The notes under the pieces: model-generated
What the model saw: the letters and a program-made list of their open reading frames with translations, nothing else
The model's database searches: none
Told to the model about the DNA's origin: nothing
NCBI RefSeq assembly: GCF_006345805.1
Contig: NC_043002.1
Span: 16,368,001 to 16,432,000 of the forward strand
DNA length: 64,000 nucleotides
DNA from: Octopus sinensis
Lineage: Eukaryota
Reading direction: 5' to 3'
In this document: one piece after another, positions 5,827 through 45,890 of the stretch
How the letters are laid out: each line of letters begins with the position of its first letter
Position numbering within the stretch: position 1 is the stretch's first letter
Position numbers and translations under genes: made by a program

Positions 5827-7000
5827 GTGAGTTTTATTAGAAATTATTCTAAGAGCAATAGATCTCCAACATTAATATGTCTATTTTTCTATTTTTATTC
5901 TCCTGCTGATACAAAGAGACAGTATGTCCGATACCAATGAATATATACATAGTACAATCAGTTTATAACATCTGAGCTTATGAAATTCGAAAATTATTTC
6001 TTGCAGACATAAAAGTAGTTCAAGTTACTAGTGGTTTTGGAAGGAGGCGATGGTAGGTGATTTGTGATGAATTTGATAGCGAGATAACATCAGTCAAGTT
6101 GTATAAACAAGTTCATGTTTGCGATCATTTTCAAAAATCTATTTGCTCAGTTACATTATAAGTGATATTTTATAAAATTTACCATACGAAAATGAGTATG
6201 CATCTACAAATCTCAATTATTTTCATGCTAGCCTTCGCTACGATTTTTATATTCAAACGAATATATCGATAACTGATATCACTTTGAGTTATATATCTTC
6301 AGTAATATTATGTAAAATTCATCAGTTTAAACTACTTTGCAATCAATTTAATGGAGAGTTTGTTAAGTGCAAATGATATAGTTTGCTTTAATTCATATGT
6401 ATCGAATAATTCTCTTGCAGCCATGCTGACATCAAAGAATCACCAGCAATTTTACCCTTAGTTTTTAGACGTTAATATGAATTATGCACATAACTACATT
6501 AATTTCTGGAGAGTGTTTGGTAAGTGAATGGTTACTATATCAAACAGATTGCTTGTATATTGTTTTCTATTATTAATGGAATATATAGATTTTATTACTG
6601 AAATTATGGTTTAGCTTAGTGGTAATTTACAATATCGTGTCATCAATCATTAATTATAAAACTGCGTAATCGTCATGAAGTGGTATTAATTCTTGTTCGT
6701 GGATGATTTAGCAAATTAAGTTTATACAATTGAAGTTGGGAACGGATTGATTAAAACCTGAAGTTTAGCACTACTAGAAGTATTTAGGGCAATATATTTT
6801 ATGTTTTAAGTCTGAATATAAAGTGAGATAATTTGATAGAAGCATTGACGTGGATAAATTTATTTTGTAGAGATATATATTGCTTAGATTCCACAAGTAA
6901 TTTTTTTTCTATATATATTTTCACATGTGAAGTTTGTAATTTGTCTGGTTTGTTTTTTTGTTGTTTTTTGGGTTTTTTTTTTTTTCGAAACTGTTCTTAA

Positions 7001-7237
7001 CTGAAAGGCGGTGAGCTGGCAGAAACTTTAGCACGCCGGGCGGAATGCTTAGCAGTATTTCTTCTGCCGTTACGTTCTCAATTCCAATTCCGCCAAGGTC
7101 GACGTTGCCTTTCATCCTTTCGGGGTCGATAAATTAAGTACCAGTTAAGCACTGGGGTCAGTGTAATCGACTTAATCCCTTTGGCTGTCCTTGTTTGTCC
7201 CCTCTGTGTTTAGCCCCATGTGGGCAATAAAGAAATA
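7001..7237 (+). mobile_element. tRNA-derived SINE family A (tail type 1) with 15-bp TSD
   Basis: TSD cgaaactgttcttaa at 6986-7000 and 7238-7252. A/B-box-like head. Homologues at 12356, 38542 and 39852. Confidence 0.9.
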
Positions 7238-8951
7238 CGAAACTGTTCTTAAATATTCCGAAATATATATTGGTTTCAAATTAACGCACAATCCCAGCAC
7301 TTAGCGGAGAGGGACGAGGTCTATTCCATGGACCTCAGTGCTGAAGTGGTACTTATTTTATCGACCACGAAAAGTAAATCGGTGTAATTTGAAATTTAGA
7401 TGTAGAGACGAACGAAATGCTCGTGTAGTCATGACTCGTCCAGCTCGCTGCCTTATATATTATCTTGCATTGATAACTAAATTTCACGCCTCTGACACAT
7501 GAAACGTATTGCCTAAATGTACAAATTTTCTTGTTATTTTTATGGTTTTCTTTAAAGGTAATTAATTCTCCTAGACGTTTCTGAATCTTGAATCAACATA
7601 TTCTATATCAATATCATTGGAAGCCTACACCTCTTTTATACGTTTCTGTGTGGATTATGCCTTACCTCTTAACACTTAACATTGTACCGTATACCTCATT
7701 CTCATTGTCCCATTTTTAGTCCACTCTTTTTCTTTACTCCAAACCTCCACTTCGTAGAACTCACGCCAAACTACTACGTATAGCCTCCAACACTTCATAC
7801 ACATTCATGATTATACTCGAAATCTCGCAGCCAATCAAATTCAGCATTAATTTTCATATAGTCCTTGACAATAAAAGTATCCAATGGTAAATCACAAAAT
7901 TGAGAGCCACTTTAGGAAAGCTTCAGGGCTATCTACATTCCATTAAGCTTTACACCTGACATTTGCCAATTCATAATATATTTATACACATACAAATCGA
8001 TTGACTAAAAAGTAAACAGGTGTGTTTCTTACAAGAAACAGTGTACTCACAAATAATTGCATGTGCAACATCGTACTGCTTCCTCGGAAATTTCAACATG
8101 AAGCGTATGTTTAATTCAGAAAGAATTTACTACATATGAAAGCTTAACTTTCAGACATCTACATAAGAACTGCAATACGACTCGAGAAAAGTTACTCCCA
8201 GTAATAAGCAGATTTAGATAATCATATGTCTTAAAATAGGTGCGTAACAAGTATTCATATGCACCAATATAAATACACAGAGTGTATAGAAAAATGGCAA
8301 TATACACTTAATCACTTACATAGGAATAGAAAATAAATAAATGAATAAATAATCTAATGAATAAAAATACCACATGATGACTAGGCAGACCTAAAACTGG
8401 CAAAACCCAGGCAAATATAAGCAATGAAAAAAGAGAAAAGGAAAGTATCTAAAATGGGGAGAAAAGGTTATTTTCTACTCTTTATGTGGCTATAGATGAA
8501 GAGATGGGGTAGCTAAAATAGTAAACTAATACGAAACATCAACTTGCCCCTTGGCTTGCGATGCCCTTAGTAACACATTTCTGTTCTTCAAGGTGGAATT
8601 TTCTGAATGTAGTGTAAAGCTATAAATAAATAGGTTGCAGAAATTAGACGACACAGTAAATTACTAATAGCAAAATAGTAAAGTGTTCTATTAAGTGATA
8701 AATGAAAGTGAAAATAGCACGCGTTTCCAGTTTTTTTTGTGTAACTGTCAACAGAATTTCAAAGACGTATATATCGTAATGCATACCTGTATACCTGTGT
8801 ACTAACACATATTCCTCTGTGAATATGTTCCTGTGAATGCATTTATGATTGTACGCATGTACATGTATGTGTGCGTACATATGCATATATAATACAGATA
8901 CACATATATATGTGCAATTAAATATTTATTCACAGAAAAAACAGAGAGACA

Positions 8952-12355: not shown

Positions 12356-12586
12356 TTATTTCTTTAATATCCACAAGGGGTTAAACACAGAGAGGAAAAA
12401 CAAGGACAGACAAACGGATGAAGTCGATTCTATCGACCACAGTGCGTAGCTGGTACTTATTTAATCGACCCCGAAAGGATGAAAGGCAAAGTCGACCTCA
12501 GCGGAATTTGAATTCAGAACGTAGCGGCAGACTAACACCGTAAGTATTTCCCCTTGTGTGCTAACGTTTCTGCCAGCTCGCCACCT
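12356..12586 (-). mobile_element. SINE family A (tail type 1) with 17-bp TSD
   Basis: TSD tgccaata(c/a)cgctctac at 12339-12355 and 12587-12603, one mismatch. Confidence 0.88.
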
Positions 12587-12614
12587 TGCCAATAACGCTC
12601 TACATTCAACGTTC

Positions 12615-12828
12615 GTGCTGGCAGAAACGTTAGCACGCCGGGTGAAATGCTTTCCGGTATTTCGTCCGTCTGTATCTTCTGTGTTCAAATTCTGCTGAGG
12701 TTGACTTTGCTTTTCATTCTTTCGGTGTCGATTAAGCAAGTACCAGTTACACACTGGAGTCGATATAATCGACTAGTCTCCTCCCCCAAATGTCAGGCCT
12801 TGCACCTTTAGTAGAAAGGATTATTGCC
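12615..12828 (+). mobile_element. SINE family A, tail type 2 (cccccaaat...ggcctt...agtagaaaggattatt)
   Basis: Head and body match family A but the 3' end differs. The same tail occurs at 40085-40255. Confidence 0.8.
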
Positions 12829-12829
12829 A

Positions 12830-13150
12830 TTATTATCATTTGATGAAAACTCACAACTTATTTTGCTGGGCATAATGGAAGTGTCAGCTGTCCACAGCCA
12901 GCAGACTATGGGGTCACATACTTGAAGAAACCTGCGAAGAATTATTTCAGTTCCAAGCAATGCTGATTTTTGTACGTGTTCAATCTTTACATTCGTACTA
13001 ATCTTTTTGAGCCATGCTGGTTATTGGGTGCTGATACATCCAAATGTGCCAAGTAGTATAGGTACCACGTTTACTCCCCTCATTGCCCACAAACTTCCAA
13101 ATTCCCATTTCAGACTTACTCACCTTCTACCTCCATTCCACATCTCTTAA
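12830..13150 (-). mobile_element. R4/Dong-clade (RLE-type) non-LTR retrotransposon, 3' fragment
   Basis: Manual translation LKWEFGSLWAMRGVNVVPILLGTFG...IEHVQKSALLGTEIILRRFLQ matches the R4/Dong C-terminal VVPIVIGALG...QKxALLGTxxILR pattern. Ends in a (TAA)n-like tail. Confidence 0.75.
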
Positions 13151-25301: not shown

Positions 25302-25553
25302 AAGATATTCAGCCTGCAGTAAAAGAACAAGAAAGTGAGTGCATAAAATTGCAGCATCCAAAAGATTTAAAACTAGACCTATTATAGCTGATCCATCATG
25401 CCCTACCCAGTGTCTATGAGATTTTATTGACATTGTGCTAGATTTATTTCACCCGCGTGTTTTGTTTTAATAAAAATGTATATTCATCAATTAGAATATT
25501 ATTGTAGATAGTAGATTGTCTTAATATTTTACATATGTAAAAGAGAACCAATT

Positions 25554-25961
25554 CTACTATATGGCCCAGAAACCTGGATGTTATCAAAGAAGCTTGAGAA
25601 GCGGTTGGATGGAACTTACACTCGCCTCCTCAAGAGAGCTCAAAATCTCTCGTGGAAGCATCATCCAACCAAAGTACAGATATATGGGAAACTACCACCT
25701 GTATCATATCTTGTGAAAGGTAGAAGAATCCAGTTTGATGGACATTGTTGTAGAGCTGAAAACGAGGTAGTTTCTACTCTTCTCTTCTGGAAGCCATCTA
25801 CTCGCGATACCAGAGGGTGCACACTCTCCTACCCTGATGTAATCTCCAGGGATACAGGCATCCAGCAACAGGACCTCCGTAATACTATGATGGACCGTGA
25901 AGTCTGGCGTAGCATAGTAAATTCCATTGTCTCTACCACGGTCGAACAATGATGATGATGA
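25554..25961 (+). mobile_element. RTE-clade LINE, 5'-truncated 3' end
   Basis: LLYGPETWMLSKKLEKRLDGTYTRLLKRAQNLSWKHH...DREVWRSIV is a typical RTE post-RT region. The stop codon runs into a (TGA)n tail. Confidence 0.85.
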
Positions 25962-36308: not shown

Positions 36309-38129
36309 CGTGCATGTGTGTGTGTTTGTGTGTGTTGTCATATGTCCCAGTGGCGATATTGTCCGAACCCTCGTCGCCACTGATATATCCCGTGATGACG
36401 ACGTACGTCGCCGTCTCTACGGGACTGGTCCGAACGGCGTACCTTCACCGACCGTGTTTCTTTTCTTTTATTTGGCCACATGGGCCCAACGAAGAGGTGA
36501 CAGACAATGACAGACAATAATAAAAAGTGGTGAGTTCTTATCGGATAGTTTACAATGGTGTGGATTTAAAAAAATTAAACATGATTAAAAAGATTTTGTG
36601 TGATGTCAAGACATCCAGACGAAGCCCGACAAAGTACAGTTTGTTTTCCGCTGGCACCACCTACTCGATCCAGTCACGTGCAGCATACTTTCTACAACAG
36701 ATTTCCATCTTTTTCTGTACATACTGTGTGACAGATGTCTCTTCTCGAATCTGAACTTGCTCTTCAGGTGGAAGCTAAAAAAGCTAGCAAACCCTTGGCC
36801 GGTGACGAAGATACCTGTCGTAATCCCTCTTGCACGCGTCTTCTACACTCTCTTTCAGTGTGGCTACTACGTAGAAAAAAAACATGCCTACCTCTCCCTG
36901 TTAAAGGCGTAAGGTGACACAATTTTATAATAGATTCAGCTGATAGTTGTACTCTTCCAATTGTCGACAACAGTTGCCCAGTAAAGGTTATCCCGTCACT
37001 TCCGTACACTGTACGAAGGCGTGCAGGACAGTTTCACTGCACTGCCTTGCCCACACCTCGGTCATATCGGTGGGACGGCATGAACCTGCCTCCATAATCT
37101 CTCTCGAACAGGTAAAGCTGATCGATAACATAACTAGGCCATAGATTTCTGGTAATTATCCAGATAGCCCGGTCCAACGGTTCTTCTAAACAGGTTGGTC
37201 AACTGACTTCCATCGACGGCAAGAGTCTTTTCATGGACATCGTCTCCCATAAATTCAACCAGCCCGCTATAGATATCCGCTGTGTAACTCCTGCTGCCGG
37301 TTTTGCACACCCGACACAGCAGCTTGTGTGTCTGTCGACACTCTCACTGCCACTCACCTTGCCTAGGTCTACGCTTGATCCATGTACTAATATTCGGTAG
37401 GGATGTCAATGGAGGGAAGAAAAACTCCACGTTCGGTGACCACACCTGCTCACTATTCAGGTAGAGAAAGATGTGCCTAAGCCTTAGCGCGAACTTGCGC
37501 ATCATCAGCTACAACACCCCTAGCCCACTTTTTAATAAGTTTTGGCAGCAGACAGAGCGCCTTACAAATAGTCCTCTTCCCTTCCACAAAAAGTAGAATA
37601 GGTGTCATTCCAGCTTCTTCACCATCAAATTGGGGCAAGGCACGACACTCAGGCGGTAGGTGATTACGGATGCTATAAACATCAGTGTCACTTCCGCCCT
37701 TCCTAGCAGGGATAACGCCCTTCCAGACCAGGTCTGAGTTAGAGCAGACACTCTGCCTGTAACGTCGCTCCAGTTCTTCTCTACCTGGAGGTCAGGACTG
37801 AACCAGACCCCTAGCATCTTAGTCGGACCTTCCGTCCAACGTCCTACGATGTTATTGGGTGGCATCGACTTGCCCTTCCAGGAGCCGAGCTGCAAGTCAA
37901 CTGACTAGCCTAGCCGCCTCGAGATTTTCGTAGCTGCCGCGAATCCTTTTGTTATGTTTGATACTTCCATCTCTTCGTGTGGTGCAACTTCGCTCTCAAA
38001 GAGTGGCATTTTTTCCTTGATGGTTTCTACCGACATAACAGAAAAGAAACAGCAATTTTCTCTTTCAGAGAGAACAAAGTTTTTTTTTATTTTATGTAGG
38101 TAATACTTCAAAATAGTTTCAAATCTTCT

Positions 38130-38541: not shown

Positions 38542-38772
38542 TATTTCTTTACTACCCACAAGGGGTAAACACAGAGAGGACAAACAAGGACAGAAAAACG
38601 GATTAAGTCGATTATATCGACCACAGGGCGCAAATGCTACTTATTTAATCGACCCCGAAACGATGAAAGGCAAAGTCAAACTCTGCGGAATTTGAACTGA
38701 GAACGTAACGGCAGAAGAAATACGGCTACGCATTTCGCCCGGCGTGCTAACGTTTCTGCCAGCTCGCCGCCT
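38542..38772 (-). mobile_element. SINE family A (tail type 1) with degenerate 19-bp TSD
   Basis: ttcaaacaacaacaataac (38523-38541) versus ttcaaaaatcaacaatacc (38773-38791), 16/19 identical. Confidence 0.87.
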
Positions 38773-39851
38773 TTCAAAAATCAACAATACCTTTGAAAAG
38801 GAAAACCAGCAAAACACAACATCTCGTTCAAATGAACTTGCTGCTCGTACGACACTACTTTCTTTATTTTGGCACTACGGCCATAACATAGAGGAGACAG
38901 CACACGCAATACGTTGGTGTACATGAAAATACGTTTCGGATGAATTATGAATATAATTAAATGAGAATGAAACCGCTTTCCTGCCCACCAAAGTACGTAG
39001 TTCCATTTTACTGTTTTTTACAAATAACAGTTTTACTTTACAGTCATGTATTTTTTCCTTAACTCAAAATTAAAAACAAATACTGCATTATATCGTCAAA
39101 AATTACAAAAGCCGGCAAACTCGTCATTTCTATACTGAAATAGTGTTATTTCAACTCTTTCTTTCCCCAAAACACTCCCCTATTTCTCTCTCTAACAGAA
39201 AGAGAGGAGTGGTTAGCCTTCTCACCTTCATAGTTTGCCAATTCCACTCTCATATTTTTCATTTTTGTTACTCTCTTTTCAATTTCGACGCTTTTTTCAT
39301 ATACTATGAGGCTTCTTAAGTTTCTGCCTGTAAGTATCGTTCTCTGATATCCTTCACCACTCTCTTCGTACGTCACAAATAGCTCTGACTCTAATTCGCC
39401 GTCTCTTTCATTTCCTTCCTTCTTTCGTACTCCTTCTTCTTGCTAGTTGAAGGCGACGGTTCGTGCGTTCGTATTACACTTGATATTTCATTTAGCTTTC
39501 CATTTATTTTGCTTTACTTTCTTATTTTCCTCTTCTTTTGTTTTTCAAAATAAGCGAAATACGTTTACAAAATATGAATAGATCACACCATGTTATCGAT
39601 TCTCCTATATATTTATGTTGTTGATCGATTATAGCATAATCTTCCAAATCGCAGAATGTTTTGTGCGATTAGTTAAGTAATGTTTTCGTGATACAAATTG
39701 TAATATGTAACGGTCGGGCGATAGTGATTCAAGTGTTTGCAGATTACGCGGGCAATCATAGACTGACACTCAAACACAGTTCAACGTAAAGGTTGGTGGA
39801 TTTGTTGGCTTGAGCACTCTTACACCAAGGTATGTCAGAATATATGTGAAC

Positions 39852-40255
39852 TAAGGCGTCGGGCTAGCAGAAACGTTAGCACTCCGGGCGAAACGCTTAG
39901 CGGTATTTCGTCTGTCTTTATGTACTGAGTTCAAATTCCGCCGAGGTCGACTTTGCCTTTCATCCTTTCGTGGTCGATTAAATAAGTACCAGTTACGCAC
40001 TGGGGTCAGGCAATCGACTTAATCCGTTCGTCTGTCCTTGTTTGTCCCCTCTGTGTTTAGCCCCTTGTATGTTGTAAAGAAATAGGTATTTCGTCTGTCT
40101 TTACGTTCTCAGTTCAAATTCCAACGAGGTCGACTTTGCCGTTCATAGTTTCGGGGTCTATAAATTAAGTACCAGTAACGTACTGACGTCGATCTAATCG
40201 ACTAGCCCCTCCCCCAAAATTTCGGGCCTTTTGCCTGTAGTAGAAACGAATATAT
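39852..40255 (+). mobile_element. SINE family A tandem dimer (tail-1 unit followed by headless tail-2 unit)
   Basis: Unit 1 spans 39852-40084 and ends gtaaagaaata. Unit 2 spans 40085-40255 and restarts at ggtatttcgtctgtc. Confidence 0.85.
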
Positions 40256-41374
40256 TTGAGCTGTTATGATGTTCCCAGAGACGAGTATTCCATTTTAAAT
40301 ATCTAGTTGGCTATATTCTATTAATACCGGTGAAAATATTTATCTATATTTAGTGGCCGGAGACAAAATCTTAGCATGTGCTGAAAGATAGCTGATACAT
40401 ACATAAACTTAGAAAACCATCATTTTATTGTCACTTGTATCAGAAGGCATCACGTTTTAATAACCATAGTTTTCTAACAATTATTGTTTTCTCACTCCGG
40501 CTTACGTAAGCTAAATATCTCAGTTTATCTTGAAGCAAATTATTATAATACATTACAATTCAACTTTTTGTATTACAAAACTATTCTAAATTACAATTAT
40601 ATTATATAGCTTCACTCACCAAATAAATTGCCAATGGTGTATTCTTTTGTGGTGAATTGATTGCAATGCATATATTGTATTATTATAGAATATATATACA
40701 TATAAACATATGACCCGTTCCCTAGATGAATGGAATACTAAAACATTTTTAAAATCTGCCACTAAATATTTCTTTTCAATATTGACGTTCTTGCGAAGAA
40801 ATTTTTGTGAAATAGTGAATTATTTCAAAATTGAATACATTTTAATATGGACAATTATTGTCCAATATCTCTTGATATATTGAAACATAGAGACGATTCG
40901 ATATTTTAAATTTATGTTTTTAATTGATAAGCTTGTTTATTGGATAGTTAGTAATAAGGAACTAGAATGCATTATGATCGTTAAATATGAGTCGTTAGCG
41001 CGCAGTACAAAATGCTAAGGACTAATGCGTGTGCCACTACGTTCTAAGTTCAAATTCCGTCATGGCGGCTTCGCCTTTCATCCTTTGAGGTTCGATAAAA
41101 TAAGTACCTGTTGAGAATTGGAGTTGATGTAATCGACTCAACTCTTACCCCAAAACTGCTTCCCTCGTGGCAAAATCAGTACCCAATATTAACGTTAAAT
41201 ATGATTATCAATATATTGACAGAAAAGTGCATATTTACGGCTACTTATATTTCTCATCGTCGTCCAATTTTGAAGCATGTGATACGACTAATTTTGTGTT
41301 TATTAATTCTACTAATAATCTAATATATATTGACTGTAGTGTTTTTGTATATACATATATGTGTGTGTGTGTGT

Positions 41375-42992: not shown

Positions 42993-43186
42993 ATTCAAAA
43001 TGTGACCGCGTGTGTACCGTTGGGGATTTTTTTACTCCGTCTTCTCTTCTTTGGATTTTTCCTTTTCCTATGTTTCTGACGAAGAGCTCCGCTCGAAACG
43101 TTAAACCCTCCTTCTTTCCTGAGCGTCCAATAATACTATACTTGTTCCACGTCCTCGCTTTGTTGTGTTTTCATGTTTGGATTAAC
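42993..43186 (+). mobile_element. Pseudo-LTR-like unit with intact hammerhead (subfamily 1)
   Basis: Flanked by (TA)n. Two further homologues occur in the window. Confidence 0.8.
43072..43106 (+). ncRNA. Minimal type I hammerhead ribozyme
   Basis: gttt-CTGACGA-a-gagc-tcc-gctc-GAAAC-GTT-aaac: stem I gttt/aaac, stem II gagc/gctc, loopless palindromic stem III (aacgtt). Confidence 0.72.
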
Positions 43187-43210
43187 TATATATATATATA
43201 GATAGATAAG

Positions 43211-44743
43211 TTTCTTTATTGGCCACACAGGGCTGCACACAGATGGGACAAGTTACAAGGTAGAGCTTTTCTTTTGGGGGATGAAAAAAACAAAAACAAA
43301 AGAAACACAAAAAAAGGGGTGGCGTAGGTTTTCGATCAAGAGGGATCGTAAAAGAGAAGAAAAGAACAAAAAAAAAAAATAAAATAAAATAAAAAGAATA
43401 AAAAGAAAAAAAAGAAAAGGAACAAAAGAAAAGAGAAATGAAAAAAGAAGAAAAAAGGGGAAAAAAAGGAGAAGAGGAAAAAGAACGATCAATAGGGATC
43501 GTGTATCACAGTATTATGATATATGGTGTAAAGGGGAAAGCAAGTAAGGTTTATCCGTGGGAAGAAAAGCCTACGAAAAAGACCACGGTAACCTTGGTCA
43601 ATATTGTTATATGTTACCACATTTGTTTGCAAGTGGGTAACCCTCTGTTTTCAATTTCTGGGTTCATAGGATTATGCTCAAGGTGGCTTCGTCATTCATA
43701 CGTGCCATTCTTGCTACATTCACCCATCTTTTTTTAAAACATTCGCTAGACAAAACTTGCCTCTCTACTCTCACTTTCCTTTTTAAGTGGTACTTGAAGA
43801 AGTTGATGAGAGATTGACCAGAGAGGAAAGTGTTTGTCTCCAATCCTTTCAGACGCGTCCACCAGATACATTCTTTCGCCATATCCACAAGGTTGATGAA
43901 AATAGATCTTCCTTCCCGTTTGAAGGAAGGAGGCGTGACAATATTGACGATAGACTCAGCTGATAAACCGACTCGTCCCACACGTGACAGCAGTTGTTCG
44001 ACATAAGCCCACAGGTCGGAAATTGTTGGACACTGCACGAGTCCGTGCAGAACGGTTTCGTCGCTCTGACCGCATCTCGGGCAGGTCGGCCCCGTGTTCC
44101 TCGAGCCGTGTCTGTAGAGCTTATCCCGAACGGGTAGCGCTTCTCGGTAGCACTGCCAGGCCAGGGATCTCTGGAAGTTGTCCATGGGCCCTGGCCCGAA
44201 AGTCGTCCTGAACAGGCGGGTCAGGTACTCCTCGTCGACGTCCAGGTTCGCCCCGAGCTCGTCGTCGTACCTCCCCTCCACTAATCCCCTATAGAATGCT
44301 TTGGTTGTGTTGAAGTCACTCAAGGTCGATCCAGGACGGCAGAGTTGCTTGAGAGCAACGCGACACGCGCGGTGCCATTCGCCTTTCCTCGGCCTCTTTT
44401 TGATCCACGACTGCAGTTCGGTCATGGAGACGAGCTGCGGGAAAGCGTGCCTCACAAACGGCGACCACACCTGTTCACCGTCGTCTACGAAGGGCCTGAG
44501 ATGTCGCAGTCTCAGCGCGTGTCTGCGCATCATCAACCACGGCATGCCCAGTCCTCCTTTTAACGGATGTTGACAGCAAATGGATCGCCTGACCATCGGG
44601 ACGCATCATTTCCACAAGAACCGAAAGAGAATGCGTTGTAGTTTGGTGATGGTAGGGTCGGGACAAGGCACGACGGTCAGGCGGTAGTAGATGACGGACG
44701 CGATGTACGTGTTCGCCACCTCCGCCCGACCTTTTAGGGACAG
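43211..44743 (-). mobile_element. Tx1/L1-clade LINE, 5'-truncated
   Basis: ORF2 C-terminal region followed by a T-rich 3' UTR ending gccctgtgtggccaataaagaaa. (GATA)n lies on both sides. Confidence 0.92.
43664..44596 (-). pseudogene. Tx1 ORF2 C-terminal fragment (post-RT region and zf-RVT zinc finger), 310 aa
   Basis: HPLKGGLGMP, REALPVRDKL, CPRCGQSDETVLHGLVQC. An upstream in-frame TGA (FLWK*CVP) and the 5' truncation make it non-functional. Confidence 0.88.
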
Positions 44744-44825
44744 TAGATAGATAGATAGATAGATAGATAGATATTCCATCTCTCTCTCGCTCTGTATATA
44801 TAAATATATGTGTATATATATATCC

Positions 44826-44890
<65 letters not shown>

Positions 44891-45890
44891 GCACAGTAAC
44901 ACTATGCATACGAATTGTTTATATGCCAGCTTCCATAATAAAAGTATCTTGACCTTGAACTGAAGATTTACTGGGAAATTTTTAGTAGAGTACATGTCCA
45001 TTCAACTTTTATAAGAGGAAGGAAAGGGGAGAAGAAGAGCACTTGTGTATGTAACAGAAAGAGAGAGAGAGACAGAGAGACAGACAAACACATAAATACA
45101 GAGAGAAAAAAGAGAAATAGACAAATATAAATAATTACGTGCATGCAAATATACATTCTTATACATGTCTGTGAGTATGGGTAAATGTTAACTCAAAGTT
45201 GTCATTATAAATCCGATAGAGGGAGACACATTCAAAATCGTGATGGCGGAAGACTCTATACCAATGCAGAGTAAAGTGCATTAAGAAATCCATCTCACAA
45301 TTTATTCATCACTTTTAATAAGTACATAGACTACATCAATAAGCCATCAGGCGACACTTGACAATCTCTGTCCGTTCTGGGCGTGTGTCTGTGCGCGTGT
45401 GTATATGTATATATATGTAGGAGTGAGAATGTATATTCATATATGTTTCTATATCTGTGTATATGCATATGAAATATGTCGAAATAGAAACATTGTTTAT
45501 GTACGTAACAATCGGCGTATAAAAATGTAATTAGAATTATTATTCAACGAAACGCCAGCGAATCAGTTGTGTTCTGAATATCTATTGAAAATTATTTTCT
45601 TTCAATTCTTACAAATGTCTCATTTCCTTTACTTATTTTGAAACTTTCATTTCGTCCAATGAGACACACGCATGCCCAGACCATCTTCTTCAACGATTTG
45701 TATTAAGACATAATTGCATTCTTAAGACTGTGTTTATTTTAAGATAGACTGAGGAAGGTAGGATATCACTGAATGAGAGTTACGGTAGAGATACTAGCAG
45801 TAACTGCATCGTAGTTGTTGTTCCATATATATCAATGGCATGTGTGCATATCCACATGTGTGTGTACATGTGTGAATGTATAGGTATATA

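What the first reader, a model, noticed from the sequence alone, without database searches (positions are those of the whole stretch)
7189..7235. SINE A carries the 3' tail of the resident Tx1-clade LINE, with a conserved stem-loop: a candidate SINE-Tx1 partnership
Seen: SINE tail ccttgt---ttgtcccctctgtgtttagccccatgtgggcaataaagaaa aligns with the Tx1 3' end (reverse complement of 43211-43260, ccttgtaacttgtcccatctgtgtgcagccctgtgtggccaataaagaaa) at 41/47 positions plus a 3-nt gap. Four tails keep a GC stem with a 5-6 nt loop just before AATAAA: gccc-catgt-gggc (SINE), gcc-ctgtgt-ggc (43.2 kb), ggcc-catgt-ggcc (36.5 kb) and ggc-cgtagt-gcc (38.9 kb). SINE A copies have 15-19 bp TSDs, which fits an L1-type APE endonuclease. 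Known: tail sharing is classic for CR1, L2 and RTE partners, whereas mammalian L1 recognises only poly(A), and tail-sharing partners are less often reported for L1/Tx1. Inference: this Tx1 lineage recognises a 3' stem-loop, and an abundant tRNA SINE has captured it.
Basis: partly seen in the sequence, partly recalled or inferred. Interest (0 to 1): 0.82.

Follow-up and report, generated by a model that had tools for sequence, protein, structure and literature searches.

The report
Octopod SINE shares LINE 3' tail
A short, abundant mobile element in this octopus-like genome ends in the same ~50-base tail, with a small conserved hairpin, as a resident L1/Tx1-type LINE, so that LINE is probably what copies it; this is a classic kind of SINE-LINE partnership seen here in a rarely reported LINE group.

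Summary
SINE A (7002-7237, 15-bp target-site duplication) ends in a tail that matches the 3' end of a 5'-truncated LINE (43211-44743, minus strand) at 41/47 positions plus a 3-nt gap (in-window blastn E 4e-8). Both elements end in AATAAAGAAA without poly(A).

The tail belongs to the LINE itself. It closes independent relatives, including full-length copies in Argonauta hians and in a JGI contig. At least three Argonauta SINE families carry it too, with 15-18 bp duplications.

The LINE has APE, RT and zf-RVT domains in ORF2. Its best named relative is Xenopus Tx1 (340 bits, against 175 for human L1 ORF2p). My tree leaves it in an unresolved group with Tx1, so "L1/Tx1 group" is safe and "Tx1 clade" is only probable.

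The 4-bp GC hairpin shows compensatory changes across 13 tail lineages: 84.6% of cells paired against 71.5% in shuffles, with slid controls at most 50%. It is thermodynamically weak.

A tRNA origin for SINE A could not be shown. The 38.9 kb "LINE tail" is only a motif match.

Verdict: a real, probably stringent-type SINE-LINE pair. It is a new member of a known kind, of moderate interest.

The parts
7002..7237 (+). SINE A, full-length copy (about 236 bp): head with A/B-box-like motifs, CORE-like centre, LINE-type tail
   Evidence: Flanked by a 15-bp TSD (cgaaactgttcttaa) at 6986-7000 and 7238-7252.
7189..7237 (+). SINE A 3' tail homologous to the LINE 3' end. It ends in AATAAAGAAATA with no poly(A).
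   Evidence: 41/47 identities plus a 3-nt gap against 43260-43211; blastn E 4e-8.
7213..7225 (+). Apical hairpin of the SINE tail: gccc-catgt-gggc
   Evidence: Pair 2 is C-G where most lineages have G-C, a compensatory change.
12357..12587 (-). SINE A copy with the same tail
   Evidence: 83% identity to the 7002 copy. TSD (t/a)gtagagcg(t/g)tattggca, about 17 bp.
38542..38776 (-). SINE A copy with the same tail (stem accc/gggt)
   Evidence: 86% identity. TSD of about 17 bp, tattgttg....
39853..40084 (+). SINE A copy with the same tail (hairpin decayed), directly followed by a 5'-truncated SINE B copy
   Evidence: 85% identity.
43211..44743 (-). 5'-truncated L1/Tx1-group LINE copy: C-terminal part of ORF2 plus a 3' UTR of about 450 nt
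   Evidence: tblastn: 71% identity to residues 757-1103 of the full-length relative P0153. Intact 310-aa ORF at 43664-44596 with zf-RVT. Inserted in (TATC)n with a TSD of roughly tatctatcta.
43211..43260 (-). 3' tail of the LINE shared with SINE A; hairpin gcc-ctgtgt-ggc at 43233-43222
36461..37973 (-). Second, older and degenerate LINE copy of the same group. It ends ...ggcc-catgt-ggcc-aaataaaagaaaa, with the hairpin at 36486-36474.
   Evidence: tblastn: 47% identity to P0153 residues 670-1097, with frameshifts. Tail.
38858..38900 (-). Tail-like motif (tctcctctatgttatggccgtagtgccaaaataaagaaag) of an unidentified, probably heavily truncated element
   Evidence: No LINE similarity upstream.

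Best explanation
SINE A is a non-autonomous retroposon of an octopod genome. Its last ~50 nt were taken from the 3' end of a resident L1/Tx1-group LINE. That LINE has an ORF1 with a CCHC knuckle and an ORF2 with APE endonuclease, reverse transcriptase and a C-terminal zf-RVT zinc motif.

The LINE behaves like a 'stringent' LINE. Its ORF2 protein is proposed to bind the 3' tail of its own RNA. The tail is a small hairpin (4 G/C-rich pairs, loop C-U/A-U/A-G-U) followed by AAUAAAGAAAU, and possibly lies within a longer helix that pairs UCUnUGUU with AAUAaAGA. Target-primed reverse transcription would then start right at that end, without a poly(A) tail. SINE A transcripts that carry the same tail would be copied in trans, giving dispersed insertions with 15-18 bp target-site duplications.

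Shown here:
- the tails are homologous
- the tail is the LINE's own end, across divergent LINE lineages and two genomes
- neither element has poly(A)
- the TSDs are as described
- the apical stem shows compensatory changes

Inferred:
- protein recognition of the hairpin
- trans-mobilisation
- direction of capture. LINE to SINE is likely, because the tail is shared by LINE lineages that are only 40-70% identical in protein, and so is older than the SINE families.
For: - Tail match: 41/47 plus a gap, E 4e-8 in the window.
- Both segments are terminal, as defined by TSDs.
- The same tail ends full-length relatives. These are L002 (P0153: APE+RVT_1+zf-RVT) and the Argonauta hians LINE in L003/L004. 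It also ends the diverged 36.5 kb copy in the window.
- At least three Argonauta SINE families with different heads end in ...ggcccttgtggctaatagagaaatc with 15-18 bp TSDs. One of these heads gives sub-threshold Rfam tRNA hits.
- Hairpin covariation over 13 lineage-level tails: 84.6% of cells paired against 71.5% in shuffles (1/500). Covariation score is 0.404 against 0.200 (2/500). Slid controls reach at most 50%. Three of the 4 pairs have changes on both sides (11-sequence version).
- LINE affinity: Xenopus Tx1 ORF2 at 340 bits and 30% identity over APE+RT, against 175 bits for human L1 ORF2p.
- Precedent for stringent L1-clade LINEs with hairpin tails shared with SINEs in plants: PMC3472496 and PMC3747384.
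Against: - There are no functional data.
- The two LINE copies in the window are dead 5'-truncated fragments.
- The match is only ~50 nt at 82%. SINE A is just as similar (82%) to the Argonauta LINE tail, so the true source subfamily has not been sampled and no species-specific co-variation is seen.
- The stem is 4 bp. MFE z-scores range from +0.8 to -2.5, mostly not significant. RNAalifold gives only -2.4 kcal/mol, with no covariation bonus.
- Two LINE lineages (L006, L014) carry a U.C mismatch in the stem.
- The compensatory changes amount to only about 4 independent events, and related sequences inflate the shuffle test.
- AATAAA could simply be a polyadenylation signal.
- Other LINE clades of the genome could not be screened for the same tail.
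Confidence: 0.7

Rival explanations
1. Historical capture only. The SINE tail did come from this LINE group, but SINE A is (or was) amplified by another LINE or by relaxed recognition. The conserved hairpin and AAUAAA would then serve the LINE's own transcript processing rather than RT recognition.
For: - The tail identity to the sampled LINE copies is only 82%, and it is equal for LINEs of two species.
- AATAAA is a canonical poly(A) signal.
- Folding energies are not distinguishable from shuffles.
- Octopus genomes hold active RTE, CR1 and Dong-R4 LINEs as well (PMC13282606; PMC9115989).
Against: - Several unrelated SINE heads in Argonauta have independently kept or acquired the same tail. 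This is expected if the tail is what gets them copied.
- Both SINEs and LINEs terminate at the same GAAAT(A/C) end without poly(A).
- The stem shows compensatory changes in SINE lineages too.
Confidence: 0.2
2. Artefact of nesting. The 'LINE tail' at 43.2 kb is a 5'-truncated SINE A fragment that landed at the end of the LINE, so the LINE does not really own the tail.
For: Only one clean LINE copy with this exact tail is present in the window. SINEs are very dense here.
Against: - The tail is contiguous with the 3' UTR in every independent relative examined (L002, L003 x4, L004 x2, window 36.5 kb).
- The homologous 3' UTR of L013 runs up to the point just before the tail, where the contig ends.
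- The TSD of the 43 kb copy brackets ORF, UTR and tail as one insertion.
Confidence: 0.02
3. The partner LINE is not a Tx1-clade element but a separate L1-superfamily lineage, either L1 proper or an unnamed sister clade. In that case the 'Tx1 partnership' label would be wrong, although the tail sharing would stand.
For: - The tree places the octopod clade (100/100) in an open polytomy (87/96) with Tx1 and several unnamed lineages.
- Only a few named references were available.
- SINE A insertions in the window show no target specificity, unlike classic Tx1 elements.
Against: - Tx1 is the best named hit, at twice the score of human L1.
- Octopus repeat annotations list L1-Tx1 families (PMC13282606, PMC8967140).
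- The Argonauta and ENA relatives form head-to-tail arrays joined by (ATT)n, which is reminiscent of microsatellite-targeting Tx1 elements (PMC4494074).
Confidence: 0.3

Closest known systems
ZmSINE2/ZmSINE3 with LINE1-1_ZM (maize and sorghum; L1 clade, stringent type; Ohshima 2012, PMC3472496; review PMC3747384)
   Same: An L1-superfamily LINE whose conserved 3' end forms a hairpin with compensatory changes and is shared with tRNA-type SINEs. Recognition does not depend on poly(A).
   Different: That pair is from plants and the L1 clade proper, and its elements end in (T)n. Here the host is an animal (octopod), the LINE lineage is Tx1-like, the end is AATAAAGAAAT (followed by (ATT)n in some LINE copies), and the stem is shorter at 4 bp.
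UnaL2/UnaSINE1 (eel) and ZfL2 (zebrafish), L2-clade stringent LINEs (Kajikawa and Okada 2002; PMC4176376)
   Same: This is the working model. ORF2 protein recognises a 3' stem-loop, and a SINE with the same tail is mobilised in trans.
   Different: The LINE clade differs (L2). Those systems are proven experimentally and have longer stems and a short terminal repeat. Nothing is tested here.
SINEU with Tx1-Mar LINEs in crocodilians (Kojima 2015, PMC4494074)
   Same: A SINE family is attributed to Tx1-type LINEs in an animal.
   Different: In crocodilians the link rests on shared target preference (Mariner-N4_AMi) and shared snRNA heads. Here it rests on a shared 3' tail, and the SINE insertions in the window are dispersed.
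Octopus SINEs OR1, OR2 and OK (Ohshima and Okada 1994), annotated today as tRNA-Core / tRNA-Deu SINEs (PMC8967140)
   Same: These are abundant octopus SINEs of about 230-300 bp with a conserved central domain. SINE A's centre (ggggtcgataaattaagtacc) looks CORE-like from memory.
   Different: I could not obtain the OR1/OR2/OK sequences, so identity with SINE A is untested. No partner LINE is listed for them in the 2013 compilation of 58 SINE/LINE pairs.

Membership tests
SINE/LINE pair of the stringent (shared 3' tail) type | The SINE's 3' end is homologous to the 3' end of an autonomous LINE of the same genome | tested here: met
   41/47 plus a gap, E 4e-8. Both segments are terminal. Replicated in Argonauta.
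SINE/LINE pair of the stringent (shared 3' tail) type | A conserved secondary structure in the shared tail | tested here: met
   The 4-bp hairpin is kept in 84.6% of cells over 13 lineages, with 3 of 4 pairs changing on both sides; shuffles 1-2/500; slid controls at most 50%. Thermodynamic support is weak.
SINE/LINE pair of the stringent (shared 3' tail) type | The tail is required for retrotransposition, and the SINE is mobilised in trans by the LINE protein | not testable with these tools
   This needs a cell-based retrotransposition assay.
Tx1 clade of non-LTR retrotransposons | ORF2 with an N-terminal APE endonuclease and an RT domain | tested here: met
   Pfam Exo_endo_phos, RVT_1 and zf-RVT in the full-length relatives P0153, P0157 and P0041. 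The window copies hold only the C-terminal part.
Tx1 clade of non-LTR retrotransposons | The RT domain groups with Tx1 references in a phylogeny (RTclass1 or Repbase references) | tested here: inconclusive
   Tx1 is the best named hit (340 bits against 175 for human L1), but the ML tree leaves an open polytomy and no curated reference set was available.
Tx1 clade of non-LTR retrotransposons | Target-sequence-specific insertion (frequent in the clade, not universal) | tested here: inconclusive
   - LINE relatives lie in head-to-tail arrays joined by (ATT)n.
- The window copy sits in (TATC)n.
- Argonauta SINE TSDs start with TAT or TGT in 7 of 7 cases.
- Window SINE A insertions show no common target.
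tRNA-derived CORE-SINE | The head is derived from a tRNA with internal pol III A and B boxes | tested here: inconclusive
   A B-box-like GAGTTCAAATTCC and an A-box-like motif are visible. ARAGORN and Rfam give no tRNA hit for any copy or for the consensus, even at E<=10. An Argonauta SINE with the same tail gives tRNA hits of 18-22 bits, below the gathering score of 29.
tRNA-derived CORE-SINE | A central CORE domain shared with MIR/OR-type SINEs | not tested
   The resemblance is recalled from memory only, and no reference CORE sequence was available. The centre is shared between SINE A, SINE B and an Argonauta SINE with a different head.
tRNA-derived CORE-SINE | Short, multicopy, dispersed, flanked by TSDs | tested here: met
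   Four full copies of 230-236 bp in 64 kb, at 83-86% identity, with TSDs of 15-18 bp.

The most novel reading that the evidence does not exclude
An animal L1/Tx1-group LINE lineage uses stringent, hairpin-based 3' end recognition rather than poly(A). Through modular tail capture it has driven the large SINE expansions of octopods. In this reading, SINE A carries the tail of one LINE sublineage. A sister SINE (SINE B, with the same head and centre) carries the tail of a second sublineage. Several unrelated SINE heads in Argonauta carry the same tail.
Probability: 0.45. Interest if true: 0.6.

Novelty: new member of a known kind. Interest (0 to 1): 0.45.

Why it matters
SINEs make up roughly a tenth or more of octopus genomes (11.6% in O. 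vulgaris, PMC13282606) and are discussed in connection with cephalopod genome and brain evolution. Yet I found no paper in the searchable library that names the LINE that copies them. The 2013 compilation of 58 SINE/LINE pairs lists no octopus pair and no animal L1/Tx1 pair.

Identifying an L1/Tx1-group LINE as the likely driver gives a concrete, testable partner. It would also add an animal case to the argument that stringent 3' end recognition is ancestral in the L1 superfamily and that the poly(A)-only mode of mammalian L1 is derived (PMC3472496). The kind of system itself, tail sharing between a SINE and a LINE, is textbook.

Tried and rejected
- **tRNA origin of SINE A.** ARAGORN on the window, and on a 4-copy consensus at lowered thresholds, found nothing. 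Rfam found no tRNA at gathering score or at E<=10.
- **Species-specific co-variation of SINE and LINE tails.** I first thought the Argonauta SINE and LINE shared variants that the window's pair lacked. The identity matrix shows SINE A is 82% identical to both the window LINE and the Argonauta LINE, so I dropped the claim.
- **Thermodynamic support.** MFE z-scores for 10 tails ranged from +0.8 to -2.5. RNAalifold found only the 4-bp stem, at -2.4 kcal/mol. The structure case therefore rests on pair counts only.
- **The 38.9 kb element.** There is no protein or DNA similarity to any LINE upstream of the motif.
- **Source genome and more loci from it.** An exact look-up of the window ORF found nothing on record, and the closest protein in the database is 80% identical. 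A same-genome consensus of SINE A and of the LINE could therefore not be built. The organisms behind the ENA and Logan contigs could not be named.
- **SINEBase supplements.** These hold the OR1/OR2/OK consensus sequences but are not available as text.
- **MAFFT alignment of whole tails.** It misplaces the 3' A-rich part, so the predicted outer helix could not be counted formally.

Full report
**What is at the site.** The window is AT-rich eukaryotic DNA (GC about 0.35, many TA/CA microsatellites). At 7002-7237 lies a 236-bp element flanked by a perfect 15-bp target-site duplication (TSD), cgaaactgttcttaa, at 6986-7000 and 7238-7252. blastn of this element against the window finds three more full-length copies: 38776-38542, 39853-40084 and 12587-12357, at 83-86% identity. 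It also finds several partial matches. The elements end in ...AATAAAGAAATA with no poly(A).

**The observation.** blastn gives E 4e-8 for this match in the window. The four quoted GC stems are all present at the stated places.

**What the 43 kb element is.**
- The segment 43211-44743 (minus strand) is a 5'-truncated LINE copy.
- It holds an intact 310-aa ORF (43664-44596) with a Pfam zf-RVT motif, followed by a T-rich 3' UTR of about 450 nt.
- The whole insertion is bracketed by (TATC)n sequence with a duplication of roughly tatctatcta. So 43211 is a true element end, and the tail belongs to the same insertion as the ORF.
- tblastn with full-length relatives shows this copy covers residues 757-1103 of P0153 at 71% identity.
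- A second, frameshifted copy at about 36461-37973 covers residues 670-1097 at 47% identity. It ends in ...ggcc-catgt-ggcc-aaataaaagaaaa.
- The only other LINE trace in the window is a CR1/Jockey-like fragment at 25548-25934, which has no similarity to the SINE tail.
- Nothing upstream of the 38.9 kb motif resembles a LINE. That 'tail' is only a motif match.

**Relatives elsewhere.** A profile-free search of 1.84 billion representatives found 638 relatives of the 313-aa piece. Cluster look-ups led to two key relatives:
- P0153, 1111 aa, from a JGI contig (locus L002).
- P0157, from Argonauta hians, an octopod (locus L003).

Both have Exo_endo_phos, RVT_1 and zf-RVT domains. The Argonauta element is a full LINE of about 6 kb, with an ORF1 carrying a weak CCHC knuckle and a 1160-aa ORF2.

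Their 3' ends read:
- L002: ...ggccctagtggccaataaatgaaatc(att)n
- L003...gtcccctctatgttttgcccttgtggctaataaaagaatta(att)n

Further copies and lineages with the same kind of end are in L004 (two), L006 and L014. The 3' UTR of L013 is homologous to that of the window copy up to the contig end. The tail is therefore the LINE's own, and it is older than the split of lineages that are only 47-70% identical in protein. This rules out the possibility that the 43 kb 'LINE tail' is a nested SINE fragment.

**SINEs with this tail in a second genome.** In the two Argonauta loci (44 kb) I found more than twenty short elements ending in ...tgttcggcccttgtggctaatagagaaatc. They fall into at least three families with different heads:
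- One has the same CORE-like centre as SINE A but another head.
- One is a 152-bp element whose head gives sub-threshold Rfam tRNA hits of 18-22 bits in three tandem copies.
- A third has a different body again.

Seven copies have clear 15-18 bp TSDs, and all seven start with TAT or TGT. Tail sharing between SINEs and this LINE group is thus a property of octopods, not of one locus. I first read this as species-specific co-variation of SINE and LINE tails. The identity matrix does not bear that out, because SINE A is 82% identical to the window LINE and also 82% identical to the Argonauta LINE tails. The actual source subfamily has probably not been sampled.

**Which LINE clade.**
- The best named relative of P0153 is the Xenopus laevis Tx1 ORF2 protein (E 7e-96, 340 bits; BLASTP 30% identity over 830 residues spanning APE and RT).
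- Human L1 ORF2p scores 175 bits and R2 proteins about 80 bits.
- An ML tree of 27 proteins puts the octopod LINEs and their ENA relatives in one clade (100/100).
- That clade sits inside a group (87/96) that also holds Tx1. The group is separate from a frog L1-like sequence and from CR1/Jockey-like outgroups, but its internal order is unresolved.
- Published octopus repeat annotations list L1-Tx1 families, thirteen of them recently active in O. vulgaris (PMC13282606; PMC8967140).

'L1/Tx1 group' is safe. 'Tx1 clade' is probable but not demonstrated.

**The stem-loop.** I took 13 lineage-level tails: nine LINE lineages, the 38.9 kb tail-like motif, SINE A, the Argonauta SINE consensus and SINE B. 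I counted the 4-bp stem on an ungapped MAFFT alignment.
- 84.6% of cells form standard pairs, against 71.5% in shuffles (1/500 as high).
- The covariation score is 0.404 against 0.200 (2/500).
- Three of the four pairs have changes on both sides.
- Sliding the 3' partner by 1-3 columns drops pairing to 17-50% (the 11-sequence version is similar).
- The stem variants are GGCC/GGCC, GCCC/GGGC (SINE A), GACC/GGUC (L004b), AGGC/GCCU (L012) and GGGC/GCCU (SINE B). The loop stays C-(U/A)-(U/A)-G-U.

Caveats:
- These amount to about four independent compensatory events.
- Two lineages (L006, L014) carry a U.C mismatch.
- Two tails (43 kb, 38.9 kb) pair in a shifted register with a 6-nt loop.
- MFE z-scores of the tails are mostly unremarkable, from +0.8 to -2.5.
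- RNAalifold assigns only -2.4 kcal/mol.

RNAfold repeatedly extends the hairpin by pairing UCUnUGUU upstream with AAUAaAGA downstream. L002 has UCA...UGA where the others have UCU...AGA, which would be compensatory. I could not count this outer helix formally because the A-rich side does not align cleanly.

**Mechanism proposed.** This follows the experimentally studied stringent LINEs (UnaL2, ZfL2; PMC4176376) and the plant L1 lineage with a hairpin tail shared with ZmSINE2/3 (PMC3472496, PMC3747384). The ORF2 protein of this LINE group is proposed to bind the terminal hairpin-plus-AAUAAAGAAAU module. Reverse transcription would then be primed at that end on nicked target DNA. SINE RNAs that carry the module would be copied in trans.
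- Shown: homology of the tails, their terminal position, absence of poly(A), the TSDs, and stem covariation.
- Inferred: protein recognition, trans-mobilisation, and the direction of capture (LINE to SINE, because the tail predates the SINE families).

**What is known.**
- The 2013 compilation of 58 SINE/LINE pairs lists L1-clade partners only for maize/sorghum and Chlamydomonas. It lists no octopus SINE and no animal L1/Tx1 pair.
- SINEU in crocodilians was assigned to Tx1-Mar LINEs by shared target preference, not by a shared tail.
- Papers on octopus repeats report abundant tRNA-Core/tRNA-Deu SINEs and L1-Tx1 LINEs but name no partner.
- I could not consult Repbase, Dfam or SINEBase sequences, so prior description there cannot be excluded.

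The finding is a new member of a well-known kind of system, in a LINE group where few cases are documented.

**Other things seen.**
- The window also holds a sister SINE (SINE B; 12617-12830, 40085-40262, 40995-41190). It has the same head and centre as SINE A but a different tail, ...cccctcccccaaaatttcgggccttttgcctgtagtagaaa.
- That tail resembles the 3' end of a second LINE sublineage, L012, which is about 40% identical in protein (27/32, E 0.002).
- LINE relatives lie in head-to-tail arrays joined by (ATT)n in Argonauta and in an ENA assembly.

These points suggest modular tail swapping and some target preference, but I only partly followed them up.

**Verdict.** The partnership reading is well supported at the level of sequence evidence, the stem-loop moderately so. 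'Tx1 clade' and 'tRNA SINE' are not established. Interest is moderate (0.45).

Noticed in passing
window 12617-12830 (+), 40085-40262 (+), 40995-41190 (+): A sister family, SINE B, has the same head and CORE-like centre as SINE A but a different 3' tail (...cccctcccccaaaatttcgggccttttgcctgtagtagaaa). This tail resembles the 3' end of a second LINE sublineage (L012:8096-8135, 27/32, E 0.002). It again contains a 4-bp hairpin (GGGC/GCCU) with a 5-nt loop (CUUUU in the 40086 copy, against CUUGU in L012). This suggests tail swapping between SINE families.
   Followed up: partly
L003:1657-19653 (Argonauta hians); L010/L011 (ENA ERZ21867824): LINE relatives lie in head-to-tail arrays. In Argonauta there is a 91-bp 3' fragment, a 4.2-kb truncated copy and two full 6-kb copies (99.7% identical), joined by (ATT)4-13. 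In the ENA contig, units of 6596 bp repeat at 99.9-100% identity. The cause could be repeated insertion into the element's own (ATT)n tail, as with microsatellite-targeting Tx1 elements, or tandem duplication.
   Followed up: partly
L003 and L004, SINE copies listed: In Argonauta, all seven SINE insertions with clear TSDs have duplications starting with TAT or TGT, and most copies have TAT right after ...GAAATC. This points to a nick-site preference or to microhomology priming with the RNA end. Three copies of one SINE sit in direct tandem at L004:4900-5357.
   Followed up: partly
window 43211-43245 and the equivalent tails in L003, L004 and window 36461-36500: RNAfold extends the apical hairpin into a longer helix in which UCUnUGUU pairs with AAUAaAGA, so the AAUAAA motif would be base-paired. 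L002 has UCA...UGA in place of UCU...AGA, a possible compensatory change.
   Followed up: partly
window 44744-44900 and 43170-43210: The 43 kb LINE copy is inserted in a (TATC)n/(TA)n microsatellite, which flanks it on both sides.
   Followed up: partly
window 25548-25934 (+): A fragment of a different LINE, with a C-terminal region similar to CR1/Jockey-type proteins P0235, P0239 and P0241 (24-28% identity). It is unrelated to the SINE tail.
   Followed up: no
protein P0133: A 1276-aa predicted host protein begins with 43 residues that are 88% identical to the LINE ORF2 zinc-motif region. This is either a LINE fragment exonised into a gene model or an annotation artefact.
   Followed up: no
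protein P0282: A 466-aa relative of this octopod LINE (61% identity) is deposited as a protein of a Herbaspirillum MAG. It is most likely host DNA mis-binned into a bacterial genome.
   Followed up: no
L003:19966-20173: Two SINE heads in inverted orientation form a long hairpin that gives sub-threshold hits to plant and animal miRNA precursor models in Rfam (MIR7723 55.8 bits against a gathering score of 200). This is a repeat artefact, not a miRNA.
   Followed up: no
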